DNA from: Saccostrea echinata
Taxonomy: Eukaryota
DNA: 64,000 nucleotides
Assembly (NCBI RefSeq): GCF_033153115.1
Contig: NW_026889771.1
Coordinates: 13,888,001-13,952,000 of the forward strand
Direction: 5' to 3'
The stretch's first letter is position 1; every line of letters starts with the position of its first letter. A program made the translations under genes and the position numbers. Shown here in pieces: positions 4,279-12,500 of this stretch. The notes below the pieces were generated by a model. The model did not search any database. It saw only the letters and a program-made list of their open reading frames with translations, and was not told the DNA's origin.

Positions 4279-7200
4279 TCAAGAAAATAGTCCCTCATTC
4301 CTCATGATTTCATTCCTAATATTTGTAAGTAAGTAGCCAAGTTTGTTCTTTCCTCTCCAGGATTTTCGGCTGTGAGCTTTGGGGTTTTGCGCACCAAGTC
4401 CGATTCCCCACAATCGATCACGTGGTGCAGCTTCCACCAGAATGCAGGGGAATGTGGCAATCAATGCTCTCATTAGATTTTTATTCTGTTTGAACTAAGA
4501 ATAGGAAGGAAACATTTAATTTATATACAAAGTCAAAACTTTACTCATTTTTTGTTTAAAAAGGAACAAGCAACTTGATAACATTCATCAACAAACAACT
4601 TTTCCAATTTTAAGGATTTAATCTCAATTATGATTGACCAAATCAGATTATTTTATATTCATCTTGATCAAATCTGAACATCTTGGACATGTAATACATG
4701 TAATTATTTTGAAGAATTGGAGAGATAAAGAGATAATCATTACCTTTGCCATAATCCCCCTCTTCACAACCTTTTCACTGATGTTAGCCCAGTGTTTGGC
4801 ATCAAAATTTTGCACTTGTCTTCCTAGTTTTTTCATTTTTACTGGATCTGTTGCTTTCATTATTTCATTGGCATGATATGGATCTTGAAATATCACTATA
4901 AAGGAAAAGTACAAGAAGTAATGTCTAGGGTGTATAAAAAAGTTTTTATAGGTTATTCCCCCTTTTACAAAACTTAAACCCAGTTGTTCATAAAGAAAGA
5001 TTGTTTACAAACATCAAAAAAATAAAAGCTTGGTCAAAACAGTGAGGAATGACAGTATTTTTAAGCAATTTCCATGTCCTATAAAGTTAAAAAAAAAATA
5101 ACTGTCTAATAAGAAACATAGTATAATAACCATCTAATGCTTCAGCTGATAAAATGGAGGATTAAAAAAATCTGCTATGACAACTTTCTACAATAATATA
5201 TTTAGGACATACAAATATTTTTTATATTTTTATGATGGCAAATATTATTGCATGACCTATTATCTCATTTGCATGACACATTTTTCTTAACCTCATAATG
5301 ATGTTTGAATGAGATTTATCTTGTTTGCATGATATATTATTATCTTATTCACACAACTCATAATGTCATTTGAACAAGATGTTATATCATTCACATTCAT
5401 TCATATAGCTAATTTGTTCCCTAAAACAGAGTTATCAATAAGTCAAGTTGCATTATTTACAATCTCCTGAAATTTTTCCTATTTTTGTGACCATCTTGAA
5501 AGAATCAAAGATAAAATGTTCACAAAACATCATTTTTGCTACTTTTAAAACTGAATTTGTATTACCGGTACATGTATAATGTAAAAAATTCCTGAATAAA
5601 AATTGAAGGCATCTAAAAATTGTTCAGTACATAACTTGGAATGACAAAAATTATGTAATGATTTTTTTGTTGTACAATATTTATTTATTGTTTTATTTAT
5701 TGAAAAAATAATTTATTTTCATTACACACATATATATAATGAAAATTTCCTGATTTACCCTTACCCACATACTGAAATCAACTTCCAATACCATATACAG
5801 TAAAAAACACATACAACGAAGTGCCAGGGATGGATGATTTTGCTTCGTTATAAACGTAATTCACTATATCTGTTAAGTTCATAATGTATTTTACAGCCAA
5901 GGGAAATGAAAATCACTTTGCTGTAAGTGTCAATTCATTATAAGCGTGTTTGCTGTAACTGTCTTTTACTGTACAAGTCTATGGCCAGCCTAATATACTA
6001 TCATAACAAAGAGATAAAATTGAATAGAAAAATCACCTCATGCGAATGAGATAATAAAACATGCAAATGAGATACGAAATATTTTGTCATGCAAATGATA
6101 TAATACCTCATGTGAATGAGACAATAAGTTGTTCATATGAGATAATAATAAGTCATGAAACCAGGATACTGTGCACCCATGCAAATGAGATAATAGTCTT
6201 GCAAACAAGGTAATAACTTAACAATGTGTGTATGACATAACATCTTGTGCAAAGAGATATCCCATGCTAATGAGATGATAAGATAAGTCATGCAAATGTG
6301 ATACATGTAATGTCTTTCAAAAGAGAAAATATGTCAAGCAAATGAGATATTTATATGTGGTGCAAACAAGATATTAATTCACGTGAATGAGATAAGTCAT
6401 GTGAACAAGATAATAAACTGAGCGAACACTGTAATATCTCGTGGGAAGGACATTAAATTTTGAGCATATTAAGAAGTAAGCATGTAAATCCTTCTTCATT
6501 ATCTGTATTTTGATTAATAAAATATCTATATTAAAAACCATTTTCAAAGCTATTGTTAAAATAAATATCACTTCCTAAATATACCACTGTAACTTTGTCA
6601 TCTTGGAAGAAACTTTTTTCCCTTTCTGCATGGTCATTTTTAATTTAGTGGAGTGAGCTTTGAAAATGACTTTTCTGGCATTGAAAGTGTGAAGACTAAT
6701 TTTTTCTTATGAAAAATAATAGTCCAAGTGGTATGACTACATATATAGAAGTTCACTTTACCTTACAACATATAAGCTGACATTGAAGTATGACAAATTA
6801 GTGTGAAAAAATGTTGACAATTCCACTTGCTAAGATTCACAGTACCAGTAATCTAAAAGCATCACATTCAACCACAATGAAGCATGGCTTTACTTTGAAC
6901 AACATATTATTACCATCTACTGAAAATTTGAACAAACCTGCTTTTTGATGCATCATATACTGCTCACTGCAGCTATAGGTGACCCCATCAAGGTCAAATT
7001 TAGCTGGATGAAAGTTACTGAACGGCGAAACCTTTCCAAAAAAGAAATGAAAGTGTTCTTTTCTGTCCTTTGAGTAATCTTGTTTCATTAAAGTTATGCT
7101 GTCTTGTAAATTTAACTTTGTTTTCTCAATCAAATCAACAGAATTAAACCGAGATTCTCTCCTTGGACTTTTTACTTTTTGGGAACTTGAGGGGTAATCT

Positions 7201-7982
7201 GGGTTGGAGTTCTTTTGCTCATCTTGGTTACGTCTGGGACTGGAACTTGCAGAAAAGTATTCACTGATATCTTTATGCTTCCTGGATCCTGTAAATTTAT
7301 CTTTGCGTGATGAAGAAAGATGTCTATCCTTGTCTCCTCCGAAGCCTGAAGATTTATCTTTGGGGTGAGAAGAAGAGTGTTGCTTATCTCTGTCCTGTCT
7401 GGAGCCTGAAGAATTATCTTTGTGTGTAGAAGAATGGTGCTTATCTCTGTCACGACTGGAACCTCGAGATTTATCTTTGTGAGTAGAAGAATGGTGCTTA
7501 TCTCTGTCACGACTGAAACCTCGAGATTTATCTTTGTGTGTAGAAGAATGGTGCTTATCTCTGTCACGACTGGAACCTCGAGATTTATCTTTATGTGGAG
7601 AAGAGTGGTGCTTACTTGTATCTCTGTCATGACTGGAACCTCGAGATTTATCTTTGTGTGTAGAAGAGTGGTACCTTTTTTCTTCCCCTTTGGAACCTGA
7701 ACTTTCATTATTTTCGGGAGAAGAGTTTTGCCCATCTTTGCCTCGTCTAGAGCTTGAATCTTCTAAATTATCAGAGGAAGAAATTTTCTTCTTCATTACT
7801 GAGACTCTATCTTTTGATGGAGATGAGTTGTGTTTATCATCAGCATCAGACATTTTTACTTTTTCTGGGTAATGCCTCTCGTCATCATTAATGTTTTCTG
7901 CAGTATCTACTGATTCATTAGATTTTAACACCTTTGCCTGCTTGCAATCATCACTCGATGTTTCACCTCCTGATCTTTTCAT
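4279..7982 (-). CDS. NADAR-domain protein A (YbiA/RibX-like N-glycosidase) with long low-complexity N-terminus, ~470 aa, 3 coding exons
   Basis: Exons 7982-6938, 4895-4744, 4494-4279 join in frame with GT-AG ends (phases 1, 0). NADAR motifs FSNFH, SEQYMMHQKA, MKKLGR, LVEAAPRDRLWGIG, WRGKNKLGYLL. Confidence 0.9.
5798..5971. mobile_element. TA-flanked MITE
   Basis: TA|CAGTAAAA ... TTTTACTG|TA. Confidence 0.6.
7270..7672 (-). repeat. Coding 54-bp tandem repeat (18 aa unit HHSSTHKDKSRGSSRDRDK, ~7 copies, degenerate at the ends)
   Basis: Unit gatttatctttgtgtgtagaagaatggtgcttatctctgtcacgactggaacctcga recurs every 54 bp in exon 1 of NADAR A. Confidence 0.9.
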
Positions 7983-8615
7983 CTTTACAAACTACAAACA
8001 GTACAGCAATCTGGAAAAGAAGTGTCATTTGATAAAAAAAATATATGCAGTATTTTGCAAATTATTGTGTTGTGTGTCAAACTGGTAAACACGTACCTGC
8101 ATAGTAAGATTTTTTTTTGTTTTTGTACTTGTATTATGATTGATAGCTAGCTAGCACATATATAAATGCAATATATGTTAATAAGCCATTGAGGTATTCT
8201 TAAAATGTTATTTTTAAATACATTTTTCTTTTCTTTAATCTAGTCTGTGTTTAATATTTATAAAGTTTACTTAAACTTGATTGTAATGTCAATAAATTGT
8301 ACAGCATACTGAGACTATGTTCTTTTTATTGAAATCAATTATATAAAACCTTTTAACATTATCATTTTTTAGGATACAGTCACAATTTAAATTAATTTAT
8401 CGTGTTATGCTTCTATATTTAAAATACATATTCAAACCCTTCAAAAACTGTTTGTCCCTGTCAAAAGGATATCTACTTTCTACTGATTTTAGTGAAACCG
8501 TTATTTCACAACATATTCGCAACAACTTGAATATTAAAGAACTTGTTTACAATATATAAGCCTCTCAGCTGCAAAGAATGGTAAACTTAGTTACACATCA
8601 GACATAGCGTATAAC

Positions 8616-9055
8616 AAAACTGAAATCAAAGAGCCCAAGCAAAAGTAAGACTGAAGGTATGCATTGTTATAAACGTATGATTTAAACAATAATGCACTCC
8701 ATTGAATTTGTCAAATCAATATTATTGTCTGTTTTGAATTTTACCTGCAATGATTTGTTTTCCCTTTTCCTAGTTGTTGTAAAATTTACTAATTTTAGCA
8801 CATTTAAAAAAAAAACGACTAAAGTACATACCAGCGAATAATGTGGGGGTTTCCAGGAGTTCAAAACGAAAGTAGATAGGGAAGGTAAGCAGGTGGTGTT
8901 AGTTGGCTATTTACCAGTTTTAGGACTAATTTGCAATTAGCTCAGGCAATTTAAATAAATAGACACTATTTCTTTTAGATAAAAAGGATTTCATTTTATT
9001 AAGAAAAAGAATAATGATATTAAGGTTGAAATGGTAAGAAACAACTTTCGGTTTC
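8616..9055. promoter_or_regulatory. Bidirectional promoter of the NADAR pair with NF-kB and ISRE/IRF-E motifs
   Basis: GGGGGTTTCC 8845-8854 fits GGGRNYYYCC. CAAAACGAAAGT 8862-8873. ACTTTCGGTTTC 9044-9055 (reverse complement GAAACCGAAAGT). AAAACTGAAAT 8616-8626. Candidate 5'UTR splice donors face outward at ~8744 (-) and 8885/9034 (+). Confidence 0.55.
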
Positions 9056-9571
9056 TCTACATCGTGATGCTTGATGTGTAACGTTATACATGTATACCAC
9101 TTCTGATACAACGAATACTTGCACAGAAATGTACAATAAGTACCGTAACTGAAGTTAGGGTATCGTTTGTTCACATTTTGAATGTTATAATTAAAACATT
9201 CAATTTTGGACGACTACACTAAAGAGAATACAAATTATACGTATGCATATACTATAATGCAGTGATATGTTGGAGGAATAGGAATATTTCTAGTAACATC
9301 CAATATCGCAATACATTATTGTACAGTGTATATGCTTATACTGAGTGTCTTATAAGTCAATACACACAGTGACCACAGAGATATCACATCACAGATTTGC
9401 TGATAAGATCTAATGGAATCTCATATCTTATGTATAAATAATATCTCTGAATAGCATGCAGATGCAGGAAAATTGAAAGAAAAAATAATGGGCAATTTTG
9501 TGCAGTTTTGCTAGAAAATGAATATATATGATAAAGATATATATAAATGGAATGAATTTTTTTTTTCAGGT

Positions 9572-12500
9572 ATGGCAGAAAAAGACTTGGAACATCAGGT
9601 GACAGAAGCACTAAAAAATCTTGAGGTAAATGATGCAGAAACAGAAAAATGCCTGAACTCACCAGAAATTGTCCAAACCAAGCCTGAGAATGAGTCAAGT
9701 GATTTAGTGGAAACAGAAAAGCCAGCTGAGTCTGCAGTGGAACAAGAACCTAGTATAGAGGCAAGCACATCAGAAAACTGTCATAGTGATAACGATAATC
9801 AGGAAACTGTAGAATTAGTGTGTACAGGAAACACTGAATATCAGCAGGAAAGTGAGGAGCAGGGAGAAGAAACATCAGAGCCGACAGAGAAAGAGGAATC
9901 TAATGACGACCATTCAGACGAAACAAAAGCCATGGGTGAAAAACATTCCAAAAATCACACAGACAAAGAGGAAAATTATGATTATCAGGGAGAATACAAA
10001 AATAGAGGAAAAGGCCCCTCAGGGGAAAACCCAGACCATGGAAATAGACATAGAGGTAATGACAATCAAGGGTGCCGACCAAAAAAGAAACCAGGGATTC
10101 AAAGACTGTACGGTGGAAGTGGTGATGAAAGACCAACCAAGGAAAGGAAGAATGAGAGATGGGAGAAAAATAATAGGAATGAGGATAGCAGAGGGGAGGA
10201 AAATGATCGGAAAGGAAACAAAGGAAAATCTAAGGAGAAAAATAGGAATGAGAGATGGGGGGAAAATAGATGGAATGAGGATAATGGAGGAGAGGAAAAT
10301 GATTGGAAAGGAAACAAGGGGCAATCGAAGGAGAAGAATAAGAATGGGAGAGCTTGGAATAAGAACTCTGAATTACCTGATGAGAGAGAACAATATGAGT
10401 ACTTCTGGAGGAGTCACTCTGTCTATAGTCAGTGGTATATGACAGAGTTTGAGGTTGATGGGTTAAAGTATAATTGTGCCGAACAATATATGATGCATCA
10501 GAAAGCAGGTACATATCACTTACATATTCATGAAAAGTTCACCTTTTTAGATTTCTTTCATTGATTTTTAAAAATTCAATTCAATTCACTTTATTGACAA
10601 TTACCATGTCGGCATACAGTCATGACATAAAACGAATTAACAAGAATAATACATACATATACAAAATGACAAATGTGAGTTGAACAAAATAATGTAGAGT
10701 ATATTCACATATCTCTAAGTATTCATTGCTGACTTTCTTTTCTGGTGTCAAAGCACTTTTTCAAAAAACAACATATCCTTCTAGCAGTTGTAATATTTGT
10801 AGGATTGACAATTTTTCTAATGGGATTATCACTAGTATATGTGTTTACATTAAATATATCAGTATAATTGCATCTAAATTGGTCATACTTTGAACAGTAT
10901 AGAACAAAATGTTTTTCATCTTCAATAAATAATTTACATGAATAGCATAAACGTTTTTCTCTAGGAATAGGGGGTTTACAGTATCTGCCCGTTTCAATAT
11001 ACAATGGATGGGCACTGATCCTTAATTTTGTTAATACAGATCTAAAACTTTTCTTTAAAGGCAGCTTTAAATAACTTTGCAATTTGTATTCATTTTGAAT
11101 TACAATTTTACTATAAAAAGCTAACTTTCCAGAGTTTGATTTGCTTATATTTTTCAGTTGTTCATGTATCTTGTTTTGGTAATGCTCTTGTAATTTGTTT
11201 TTCAAGGTTGTGTGAGAAATATCCAAAGAAGTGATATTTAATTTTTGTAGTAATGAAGACAGTTTTCTTTGCCAAGATATTCTAGATACAAGTTTTTTGT
11301 CTTCTTTAAATGCAGAAATCACTAAATAATTATTATAATCATGTTTGTTTTCCATTTCCTTAAGTCTCTTAAAATATTTAAACATATATTCATAACATAA
11401 ATAGTACAAAGGAAAACGACCCAATTCACATAAAACAGCAAGATTTGATGCCTTTCTATGTACCCCTAGTATGTCTTTAAATATTAAGTGTTGTGTTTTT
11501 TCAAAAGGAAATTGGTCTGAAGACATTAAATCACATTTGAAGTCAGTTATCCATACTTCAGATCCATATGTAATAATTGGTATTATCATTGACTGGTATA
11601 ATTTTAACATAATTTCAGCTGAAAAATTAATGTTTGCAGGAAAATTTGATTTAATAGCATAATATGCTTTCCTAGCACGTTCTGATAGTTGTTCAGCTGC
11701 AAATTTCATTTTTCCATCAGATCTGAACACAACACCCAAATATTTATATTCATTCATTATGTTAATCATTTGGTGATTGTAATAAAATCTAAATGATGTT
11801 TCATCATCTGTTTTTCTTGAAAAAATCATAACATCTGTTTTATCCATATTAACACACAATTTCCAGTCTGAACAATATTTTCCTAAAACATCTATACAGT
11901 TTTGTAGACCAACTTCTGATTCTGATACAATAAAAAAGTGTTAAAGGTTATATTTAACAATGTTTAACAATTCCACTTTGATATTTTTATCAAATGTGGT
12001 TACAGTTTCAAAGTAGATGTATACTCACTATTTGTTGATGCACACAAAAGAAGGAAGTTACTTAGTTGCCTTGTCATTGTTTCATACTTTTCTAATTTTT
12101 CTCTAGAACTGATGAAGGATAAAGATAGTGCAGAAATTATTATGGCATTAGATCAACCACGTGAAATGAAAGAACAAGGAAGATACGTGAAGAACTTTAA
12201 TCAAGAGTTGTGGGACAAAAATTGTAGAAATATTGTTGAAAAAGGAAATATGGCAAAGGTATTGTGTTTGAAAATAGATTAAGTACATGTAGCATACATT
12301 TGTTCCATTGATAGAGAATTGTAATGTGCTAGAATGAATGTTTAGTCTGCCATTGTGATACCCTTCAAGGAGCCTCTGTCAGTTTACAGAAGAATGTTCA
12401 ACATTAGTGCTTGTGATATACATGCATGTATATGAATCCACTGAAGAAATATTAAACACCACATAATTTATCCTTTTCAATTGACATTTTGTAAAAAGTA

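What the first reader, a model, noticed from the sequence alone, without database searches (positions are those of the whole stretch)
8616..9055. ISRE and NF-kB sites in the shared NADAR promoter suggest immune induction
Seen: an ISRE-consensus match (ACTTTCGGTTTC, 9044-9055), and a kB site GGGGGTTTCC (8845) followed 7 bp later by an IRF-E-like CAAAACGAAAGT. A further AAAACTGAAA lies at 8616. All fall within ~440 bp around the presumed TSSs. Established: oysters have IRF- and Rel-dependent antiviral responses, and adjacent kB+IRF sites typify vertebrate antiviral promoters. Inference: one or both NADARs are ISG-like genes, which would link this family to animal innate immunity as it is linked to phage defence in bacteria.
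Basis: partly seen in the sequence, partly recalled or inferred. Interest (0 to 1): 0.8.

Follow-up and report, generated by a model that had tools for sequence, protein, structure and literature searches.

The report
Immune-type motifs beside oyster NADAR genes
The interferon-type and NF-kB-type DNA motifs are really there next to two back-to-back oyster NADAR genes and are rarer than chance, but they lie in the transcribed leader and first intron of one gene rather than in the shared promoter, and nothing yet shows that infection switches the genes on.

Summary
Against 264 kb of this genome, one strict kB site plus two ISRE-type sites in the 1.56-kb 5' region has a nominal probability of about 2e-3. 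The kB site with an IRF-type site 7 bp away is unique among 13 kB sites. The stretch is single-copy.

RNA contigs redraw the anatomy. The minus gene starts at or just above 8125. The plus gene has two alternative non-coding first exons, 1a (8526 or lower, to 8656) and 1b (about 8838-8884). The real inter-TSS core (about 8126-8525) holds none of the motifs. AAAACTGAAA lies inside exon 1a, the kB/IRF pair inside exon 1b, and the ISRE in intron 1.

Both genes are transcribed in all four runs laid, whose sample conditions are unknown. Induction and conservation could not be tested, because the tool for orthologous loci was closed.

Controls argue for caution. Five antiviral-family genes of this genome show no strict motif upstream, and the best ISRE in the window precedes a chloride-channel gene.

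C. elegans irg-1 is already a NADAR-family infection-response gene.

I put a real Rel/IRF module at about 35%. The scan's other NADAR notes in this genome concern LINE ORF1-NADAR fusions, not these motifs.

The parts
8616..8625 (+). AAAACTGAAA, a loose IRF-core match (AANNGAAA). It lies inside the transcribed exon 1a of the plus NADAR gene.
   Evidence: Exon 1a contig 8526-8654 in run X1. Background rate of AAAANNGAAA is 0.47/kb.
8845..8854 (+). GGGGGTTTCC, a strict kB consensus (GGGRNWYYCC). It lies inside alternative first exon 1b, about 10 nt from the contig's 5' end.
   Evidence: 4 matches in 64 kb, 2.85 expected. Rate 0.049/kb. Exon 1b joint in run X2.
8862..8873 (+). CAAAACGAAAGT, a near-ISRE / IRF-E (first G replaced by C), 7 bp after the kB site. 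It also lies inside exon 1b.
   Evidence: It is the only kB plus near-ISRE pair within 30 bp among 13 kB sites in 264 kb.
9044..9055 (-). GAAACCGAAAGT, a strict ISRE consensus (GAAANNGAAASY). It lies in intron 1 of the plus gene, about 160 bp past the exon 1b donor and about 900 bp upstream of the minus-gene start.
   Evidence: 3 matches in 64 kb, 1.06 expected. Rate 0.061/kb. No RNA contig covers 8946-9533.
8759..8768 (-). AAAAGGGAAA (plus strand TTTCCCTTTT), a further IRF-core-like match about 70-80 bp upstream of the exon 1b start.
8803..8815 (+). TTTAAAAAAAAAA, a TATA-like run about 33 bp upstream of the 5' end of the exon 1b contig. I infer it is the core element of an alternative promoter P1b.
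   Evidence: Sequence. The spacing to the contig end is my inference.
8526..8656 (+). Plus NADAR gene, non-coding first exon 1a. Its 5' end is open, so the TSS is at or below 8526. The donor is GAAG|GTATGC, spliced to 9570.
   Evidence: Run X1 contig with joint 8654>9568, GT..AG after a +2 shift.
8838..8884 (+). Plus NADAR gene, alternative non-coding first exon 1b. The 5' end is approximate. The donor is GGAAG|GTAAGC, spliced to 9570. It contains a 12-codon uORF (ATG 8841 to TAG 8879) that spans both motifs.
   Evidence: Run X2 contig with joint 8882>9568, GT..AG after a +2 shift. The uORF was read.
9570..10508 (+). Plus NADAR gene, first coding exon (ATG at 9572). It is 100% identical to S. 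echinata LOC133190468, and the NADAR domain begins at its end.
8097..8125 (-). Minus NADAR gene, non-coding exon 1 (the part seen). The TSS is at or above 8125, probably about 8130-8135, about 30 bp from the TATA at 8158-8167.
   Evidence: Run X2 joint 8010|8097, CT..AC on plus = GT..AG on minus, 86-nt intron. The TATA was read.
6938..8010 (-). Minus NADAR gene, first coding exon (ATG at 7982). It encodes a His/Ser/Arg-rich repeat region followed by the start of the NADAR domain.
8126..8525 (.). The true inter-TSS core of the divergent pair (400 bp or less). It is AT-rich, with TATA-type boxes at 8158-8167, 8340-8348 and 8414-8424. It holds no kB, ISRE or GAS match.

Best explanation
The stretch is the 5' control region of two divergently transcribed NADAR paralogs of the oyster Saccostrea echinata.

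Shown:
- The minus gene starts at about 8130.
- The plus gene starts at 8526 or lower (exon 1a) and has a second first exon, 1b, beginning at about 8838.
- Both first exons splice to the coding exon at 9570.
- Both genes are transcribed in every run laid.

Inferred: a compact, TATA-flanked bidirectional core of 400 bp or less (about 8126-8525) drives basal expression of both genes. The flagged kB/ISRE matches lie downstream of it, in the plus gene's leader exons and first intron. They are more likely incidental matches, or at most weak modulators, than an interferon-type on-switch. On this reading the NADAR pair is an ordinarily expressed gene pair, and the motifs do not make it ISG-like.
For: - RNA contigs place the TSSs and alternative first exons, and show both genes expressed in 4 of 4 runs, at most 3 samples and 2 studies.
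- The inter-TSS core has no kB, ISRE or GAS match.
- All four motifs lie downstream of the plus gene's first TSS and 470-900 bp upstream of the minus-gene start.
- In this genome strict motifs do not track antiviral genes. The 7 kb upstream of viperin and four IRF genes holds no strict kB or ISRE.
- The strongest ISRE in the window, a tandem at 61081-61098, precedes a CLC chloride-channel gene.
- The motif set was chosen after looking. AAAACTGAAA-type matches occur at 0.47/kb.
Against: - The cluster is nominally unlikely by chance: about 2e-3 with empirical genome rates and 0 of 5000 local Markov simulations.
- The kB plus IRF-type pair 7 bp apart is unique in 264 kb.
- The pair sits at the 5' end of the exon 1b contig, which lies about 33 bp from a TATA-like run.
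- Oyster IRF and Rel pathways act on ISRE and kB reporters (PMC5869526, PMC5557890).
- A NADAR/DUF1768 gene is infection-induced in C. elegans (PMC3527274).
- Contigs cannot show expression level, so basal presence does not exclude induction.
- The control genes' true TSSs are unknown.
Confidence: 0.45

Rival explanations
1. The kB site and the adjacent IRF-type site, helped by the intronic ISRE and the upstream AAAAGGGAAA, form a genuine Rel/IRF-responsive module. It marks an alternative, stimulus-responsive promoter P1b or a leader/intron-1 enhancer. Infection would then add exon-1b transcripts of the plus NADAR gene, and perhaps raise the minus gene from 700 bp away, on top of basal expression. 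This is essentially the reader's reading with corrected anatomy.
For: - Rarity of the cluster and uniqueness of the kB/IRF adjacency.
- Exon 1b begins about 10 nt before the kB site and about 33 bp after a TATA-like run.
- A further IRF-core match lies at about -75 from that start.
- Different samples show different first exons: X1 shows 1a and X2 shows 1b.
- The stretch is single-copy, not a repeat.
- Oyster IRFs activate ISRE reporters (PMC5869526).
- C. elegans irg-1 is a DUF1768/NADAR gene induced by P. aeruginosa (PMC3527274; DUF1768 = NADAR, PMC11543638).
- An oyster nidovirus carries NADAR and macro domains, which suggests that nucleic-acid ADP-ribosylation matters in oyster-virus conflict (PMC12377751).
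Against: - There are no expression data under challenge and no conservation data.
- The sites are transcribed, at about +10 to +37 of exon 1b, rather than upstream. The ISRE is at about +200.
- Contigs cannot show a TSS, or the absence of an isoform.
- The exon-1b contig belongs to a divergent allele (7 differences in 254 nt), so first-exon choice could depend on the allele.
- Antiviral control genes lack strict motifs, and a CLC gene has the best ISRE.
- NADAR terms were absent from the held supplements of two C. gigas antiviral transcriptome papers. Those files are incomplete, and orthologs may be listed as uncharacterized.
Confidence: 0.35
2. The matches are functional but serve other factors or another level of control. 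GGAAA/TTTCC cores also fit ETS, NFAT and STAT-type factors, and GAAA repeats fit other IRF-independent binders. Alternatively, the sequence matters as RNA, since the 12-codon uORF of exon 1b spans both motifs and would damp translation of that isoform. Either way the role would be tissue or developmental control, not immune induction.
For: - Both leader exons carry short uORFs (read).
- The motifs are transcribed.
- The tandem ISRE before the CLC gene is followed at once by an ETS-like TCGGAAGT. That suggests GAAA-rich promoter elements in this genome are not confined to immune genes.
Against: No direct evidence supports any specific alternative factor. There is no GAS match in the region. The uORFs are short and such uORFs are common by chance.
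Confidence: 0.15

Closest known systems
Vertebrate virus-inducible promoters with adjacent IRF and NF-kB sites (IFN-beta enhanceosome PRDIII-I/PRDII; ISG-type ISRE promoters). This comparison is from general knowledge.
   Same: There is a strict kB decamer with an IRF-type GAAA element a few bases away, and a further strict ISRE within 200 bp.
   Different: In vertebrates the sites lie within about 50-200 bp upstream of the TSS and are conserved and bound. Here they are transcribed or intronic. Binding, conservation and inducibility are all untested, and no GAS/STAT site is present.
C. elegans irg-1 (C07G3.2), an infection response gene annotated DUF1768 (= NADAR)
   Same: It is an animal NADAR-family gene whose defining property is induction by infection (PMC3527274 table; DUF1768 = NADAR in PMC11543638). 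A Mytilus NADAR protein that matches the plus gene's NADAR region carries the name 'protein irg-1-like' in NCBI.
   Different: From general knowledge, irg-1 is induced through a bZIP (ZIP-2) pathway that senses translation block, not through Rel or IRF, both of which nematodes lack. No induction data exist for the oyster genes.
Bidirectional (head-to-head) promoters with alternative first exons
   Same: The divergent TSSs are 400 bp or less apart, TATA-type boxes face both ways, and two first exons splice to one acceptor.
   Different: Nothing unusual. This is the ordinary part of the locus.
Bacterial DarT1-NADAR toxin-antitoxin / anti-phage modules
   Same: They share the NADAR hydrolase domain (Pfam PF08719). 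Eukaryotic NADARs also remove ADP-ribose from guanine in vitro (PMC11543638).
   Different: The oyster genes have long low-complexity N-termini and introns. I did not look for a partner ADP-ribosyltransferase, and their regulation has no relation to the bacterial operons.

Membership tests
ISRE (IRF/ISGF3 response element) | Sequence fits GAAANNGAAASY | tested here: met
   9044-9055 on the minus strand is GAAACCGAAAGT. 8862-8873 misses the first G, and 8616-8625 fits only the AANNGAAA core.
ISRE (IRF/ISGF3 response element) | Lies in the proximal promoter, upstream of the TSS of the regulated gene | tested here: not met
   RNA contigs put the strict ISRE in intron 1 of the plus gene, about 200 bp past the exon 1b start and more than 500 bp past the exon 1a start. 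It is about 900 bp upstream of the minus-gene start.
ISRE (IRF/ISGF3 response element) | Bound by an IRF and confers induction by virus, dsRNA or cytokine | not testable with these tools
   No labelled challenge RNA-seq was reachable. The runs found are unlabelled contigs.
kB site (Rel/NF-kB) | Sequence fits GGGRNWYYCC | tested here: met
   GGGGGTTTCC at 8845-8854. The genome rate is 0.049/kb.
kB site (Rel/NF-kB) | Bound by a Rel protein and needed for induction | not testable with these tools
   This needs EMSA, ChIP or a reporter assay.
Composite kB + IRF antiviral module | The two sites lie adjacent, within a few helical turns | tested here: met
   The gap is 7 bp. It is unique among 13 kB sites in 264 kb.
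Composite kB + IRF antiviral module | Conserved in orthologous promoters | not testable with these tools
The metagenome scan returned no oyster locus. The genome collections hold only bacteria and archaea.
ISG-like gene | Transcript rises after immune challenge | not tested
   Only the presence of transcripts in 4 unlabelled runs is shown. NADAR terms were not found in the held supplements of PMC6182001 and PMC7064767.
Bidirectional promoter | Two divergent genes with TSSs less than 1 kb apart | tested here: met
   Minus-gene exon 1 reaches at least 8125 and plus-gene exon 1a reaches 8526 or lower.
NADAR family (PF08719) for both flanking genes | Significant match to the Pfam NADAR model | tested here: met
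   The single first coding exons score below the cut-off (28.9 and 24.9 bits against 35.1), because the domain is split by introns. The next plus-gene exon scores 38.5 bits. Genome-wide exon hits lie at window 4306-4500, 4741-4926, 12085-12258 and 13102-13293. The database protein P0001 carries PF08719.

The most novel reading that the evidence does not exclude
A Rel/IRF-responsive alternative promoter sits inside the leader region of an oyster NADAR gene. Infection would then switch on an exon-1b isoform of an enzyme that erases ADP-ribose from nucleic-acid bases. That would make NADAR an interferon-stimulated-gene-like effector, or a self-protection factor, in lophotrochozoans. It would parallel C. 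elegans irg-1 and mirror the NADAR and macro domains carried by an oyster nidovirus.
Probability: 0.25. Interest if true: 0.6.

Novelty: new member of a known kind. Interest (0 to 1): 0.3.

Why it matters
If the sites work, an enzyme family absent from vertebrates and known mainly from bacterial toxin-antitoxin and anti-phage systems would be tied to the IRF/NF-kB antiviral programme of a mollusc. [quoted passage not shown] It would be testable with one RNA-seq experiment. If they do not work, this is an ordinary bidirectional promoter, and the case is a caution that consensus matches in AT-rich oyster DNA do not identify immune genes. The link between NADAR and animal infection responses is not new in itself, because C. 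elegans irg-1 is a DUF1768/NADAR gene.

Tried and rejected
- **Repeat or transposon origin of the motif cluster:** rejected. The 1556-bp stretch is single-copy in the 923-Mb genome, with only a 45-bp match elsewhere.
- **Orthologous promoters:** A metagenome scan with the exon-2 protein gave 80 loci, none a close oyster relative; the best was 41% identity over 79 residues.
- **Larger genome background:** I used 264 kb in all.
- **Positive controls:** viperin and four IRF genes of this genome have no strict kB or ISRE in 1.2-1.5 kb upstream of their ATG. This is uninformative on sensitivity because their TSSs are unknown. Viperin does carry a palindromic GAS at -128 and GAAAGTAAAAGT at about -105.
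- **Literature on oyster NADAR induction:** nothing was found. The 'PYRR' hit was 'pyrrolidone'.
- **Supplements of PMC6182001 and PMC7064767:** they hold no NADAR, DUF1768 or YbiA term. A poly(I:C)-sustained 'Nek4-like' gene, CGI_10010191, could not be mapped to the C. gigas kinase-NADAR fusion, so it remains only a lead.
- **GAS/STAT sites in the region:** none.
- **Spliced model:** I built no joined model. Queries went exon by exon, or used the database protein P0001 by its id.

Full report
**What is there**

The window comes from Saccostrea echinata. The first coding exon of the plus gene is 100% identical to 'uncharacterized protein LOC133190468 [Saccostrea echinata]' (P0001, 476 aa, PF08719), and the nearest relative is S. 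cucullata LOC134242910 at 67%.

Two genes stand head to head.
- The minus-strand gene has its first coding exon at 6938-8010 (ATG at 7982).
- The plus-strand gene has its first coding exon at 9570-10508 (ATG at 9572).
- Both exons run into a NADAR domain that continues in later exons.

**The observation**

- AAAACTGAAA at 8616-8625.
- GGGGGTTTCC at 8845-8854.
- CAAAACGAAAGT at 8862-8873, after a 7-bp gap.
- ACTTTCGGTTTC at 9044-9055, which is GAAACCGAAAGT on the minus strand.

The kB site fits GGGRNWYYCC and the last motif fits GAAANNGAAASY. The third misses only the first G. The first fits only the minimal IRF core.

**Chance**

Within the window, the kB consensus occurs 4 times (2.85 expected from shuffles) and the strict ISRE 3 times (1.06 expected).

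I added 200 kb from 20 random places of the same genome. The pooled rates and their consequences for the 1556 bp between the two first coding exons are:

| Motif | Rate per kb | Probability in 1556 bp |
|---|---|---|
| Strict kB | 0.049 | 0.074 for one or more |
| Strict ISRE | 0.061 | 0.090 for one or more |
| Near-ISRE | 0.174 | 0.031 for two or more |

The joint probability is about 2e-3.
- Of 13 kB sites in 264 kb, only this one has a near-ISRE within 30 bp.
- Six IRF cores in 460 bp occur in 0.73% of genome windows, and this is the only such window that also has a kB site.
- A first-order Markov model of the local sequence never produced the set in 5000 trials.
- The stretch is single-copy in the genome, so it is not a transposon relic.

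The cluster is therefore more than simple chance at a nominal level. The discount is that the motif set was chosen after looking, and that the scan inspects many gene starts.

**Anatomy from RNA**

The five runs that hold the stretch are listed as 'RNA?'. The four I laid behave as RNA: contigs cover exons, skip introns at GT..AG, and leave the intergenic DNA bare.

- **Minus gene.** It has an 86-nt intron (8011-8096) and a short non-coding exon 1 that reaches at least 8125. A TATA-type box at 8158-8167 would put the TSS near 8130-8135. That placement is my inference.
- **Plus gene.** It has two alternative non-coding first exons, and both splice to 9570. Exon 1a runs from 8526 or lower to 8656 (run X1). 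Exon 1b runs from about 8838 to 8884 (run X2).
- **Exon 1b start.** It begins about 33 bp after a TTTAAAAAAAAAA run (8803-8815), which suggests its own core promoter. This is inference, because contigs cannot show a TSS.

The region truly shared by the two genes is therefore about 8126-8525. It contains TATA-type boxes but no kB, ISRE or GAS match.

- AAAACTGAAA lies inside exon 1a.
- The kB/IRF pair lies inside exon 1b, at about +10 to +37 of its contig start.
- The strict ISRE lies in intron 1.

Seen from the minus gene, they lie about 480, 710 and 910 bp upstream.

Both genes have contigs in all four runs laid (at most three samples, two studies), so they are expressed without any known challenge. 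Contigs give no expression levels.

**Can the immune reading be tested here?**

Only indirectly.
- The established part holds. Oyster IRF acts downstream of MAVS and activates ISRE reporters, and IRF and NF-kB translocation leads to antiviral gene transcription (PMC5869526, PMC5557890, PMC8218723).
- Induction could not be checked, because the runs carry no usable labels and the one laying call is spent.

I ran two controls inside this genome.
1. Genes that belong to the antiviral programme by homology, viperin and four IRF genes, show no strict kB or ISRE in the 1.2-1.5 kb upstream of their start codons, about 7 kb in all. Viperin has a palindromic GAS and a degenerate GAAAGTAAAAGT about 100-130 bp before its ATG.
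2. The best ISRE of the whole window is a tandem, GAAAAAGAAAGTGAAAGC, at 61081-61098. It lies about 90 bp before a candidate first exon of what downstream exons show to be a CLC chloride-channel gene.

Strict consensus matches are therefore neither a sensitive nor an obviously specific mark of antiviral genes in this genome. The unknown TSSs of the control genes limit this argument.

**Family context**

NADAR domains remove ADP-ribose from guanine in DNA. They act as antitoxins of DarT1, and eukaryotic members keep the activity in vitro. The family, formerly DUF1768, is absent from chordates (PMC11543638, PMC10789625).

The link to animal infection responses already exists but is rarely spelled out. 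C. elegans irg-1 (C07G3.2), the standard reporter of the P. aeruginosa response, is annotated DUF1768 (PMC3527274). NCBI names a Mytilus NADAR protein 'irg-1-like'.

An oyster nidovirus encodes NADAR and macro domains (PMC12377751). These facts raise the prior for immune regulation of oyster NADAR genes, but they say nothing about these sites.

**Verdict**

- The 'shared promoter' framing is corrected: the motifs belong to the leader and intron-1 region of the plus gene, and the kB/IRF pair lies at the 5' end of the exon 1b contig.
- Whether they are working Rel/IRF sites is open.

My estimates are:
- About 45%: incidental matches on a constitutively active bidirectional promoter.
- About 35%: a real Rel/IRF module at promoter P1b or a leader enhancer.
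- About 15%: functional, but for other factors or at the RNA (uORF) level.

Even if real, this would be a new member of a known kind of regulatory module. Its interest would lie in tying NADAR to mollusc antiviral signalling.

- I built no joined spliced model. Searches used single exons, or the database protein P0001 by its id.

Noticed in passing
window 61081-61098 (and 61186-61233; L126 234-401, 904-1110): A tandem of overlapping strict ISREs (minus strand GAAAAAGAAAGTGAAAGC) is followed at once by the ETS-like TCGGAAGT. TCACGTGA (E-box/CLEAR-like) lies just before a candidate first exon, ATG 61186 ... TCG|GTATGT (MDDSERTPLINRRPTS, an [DE]xxxL[LI]-type motif). Downstream exons are Voltage_CLC (PF00654). 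It looks like a CLC-7-like lysosomal chloride transporter with a classically placed ISRE. The link between this first exon and the CLC exons is inferred, not shown by RNA.
   Followed up: partly
window 7890|7891 (minus NADAR gene, first coding exon): A transcript contig of run X5 carries 429 extra letters between 7890 and 7891. Contigs of X2 and X3 break off with loose ends at the same point. The length equals 143 codons, so it would be in frame. The reference allele appears to lack a segment present in other alleles or individuals, or in organism B.
   Followed up: no
own genome, e.g. L003-L014 (G000:C2:31059758-31060192 and more than 100 others): The NADAR Pfam model gives 151 matches in this genome. 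Most are intronless open frames of 400-455 aa with near-identical scores, so they look like a mobile element. Earlier scan notes (s1-810018, s1-817733) read them as LINE ORF1-NADAR fusions. I did not verify the LINE context.
   Followed up: partly
window 10563-11859: Intron 2 of the plus NADAR gene holds a reverse-transcriptase-like ORF on the minus strand (10723-11859, 378 aa). Its edge (10574-10700) is covered by many high-depth RNA contigs with differing flanks, as expected of an expressed repeat family.
   Followed up: no
window 8841-8879 and 8592-8621: Each alternative leader exon of the plus gene carries a short uORF. Exon 1b has 12 codons (MWGFPGVQNESR) that span the kB and IRF-type motifs. 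Exon 1a has 9 codons, and its stop codon overlaps the start of the AAAACTGAAA motif.
   Followed up: no
L037 (G000:C22:10814663-10817944), minus strand, about 95-130 bp before the viperin ATG: The viperin gene of this genome lies on the same contig as the window. It has a palindromic GAS (TTCAAAGAA) and a degenerate ISRE-like GAAAGTAAAAGT close together just upstream of its start codon, but no strict ISRE or kB site within 1.5 kb.
   Followed up: partly
window 9568-10508, run X5 (organism B) and run X2: Organism B's transcript differs from the reference at 51 of 878 positions and joins a different-looking next exon. Run X2 shows two allelic contig sets (0 against 4 differences over 9792-9909). 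Polymorphism or paralogy is high at this locus. The exon-1b contig belongs to the divergent allele.
   Followed up: no
proteins P0016, P0020, P0021, P0035, P0074; PMC7064767 supplement file 6: Crassostrea species have NADAR fused to a Nek-like kinase and to a RING finger. C. virginica NADAR genes LOC111118875 and LOC111118883 have neighbouring numbers, which hints at a cluster. A 'Nek4-like' gene, CGI_10010191, shows sustained up-regulation after poly(I:C) in C. gigas, but I could not establish whether it is the NADAR fusion.
   Followed up: no
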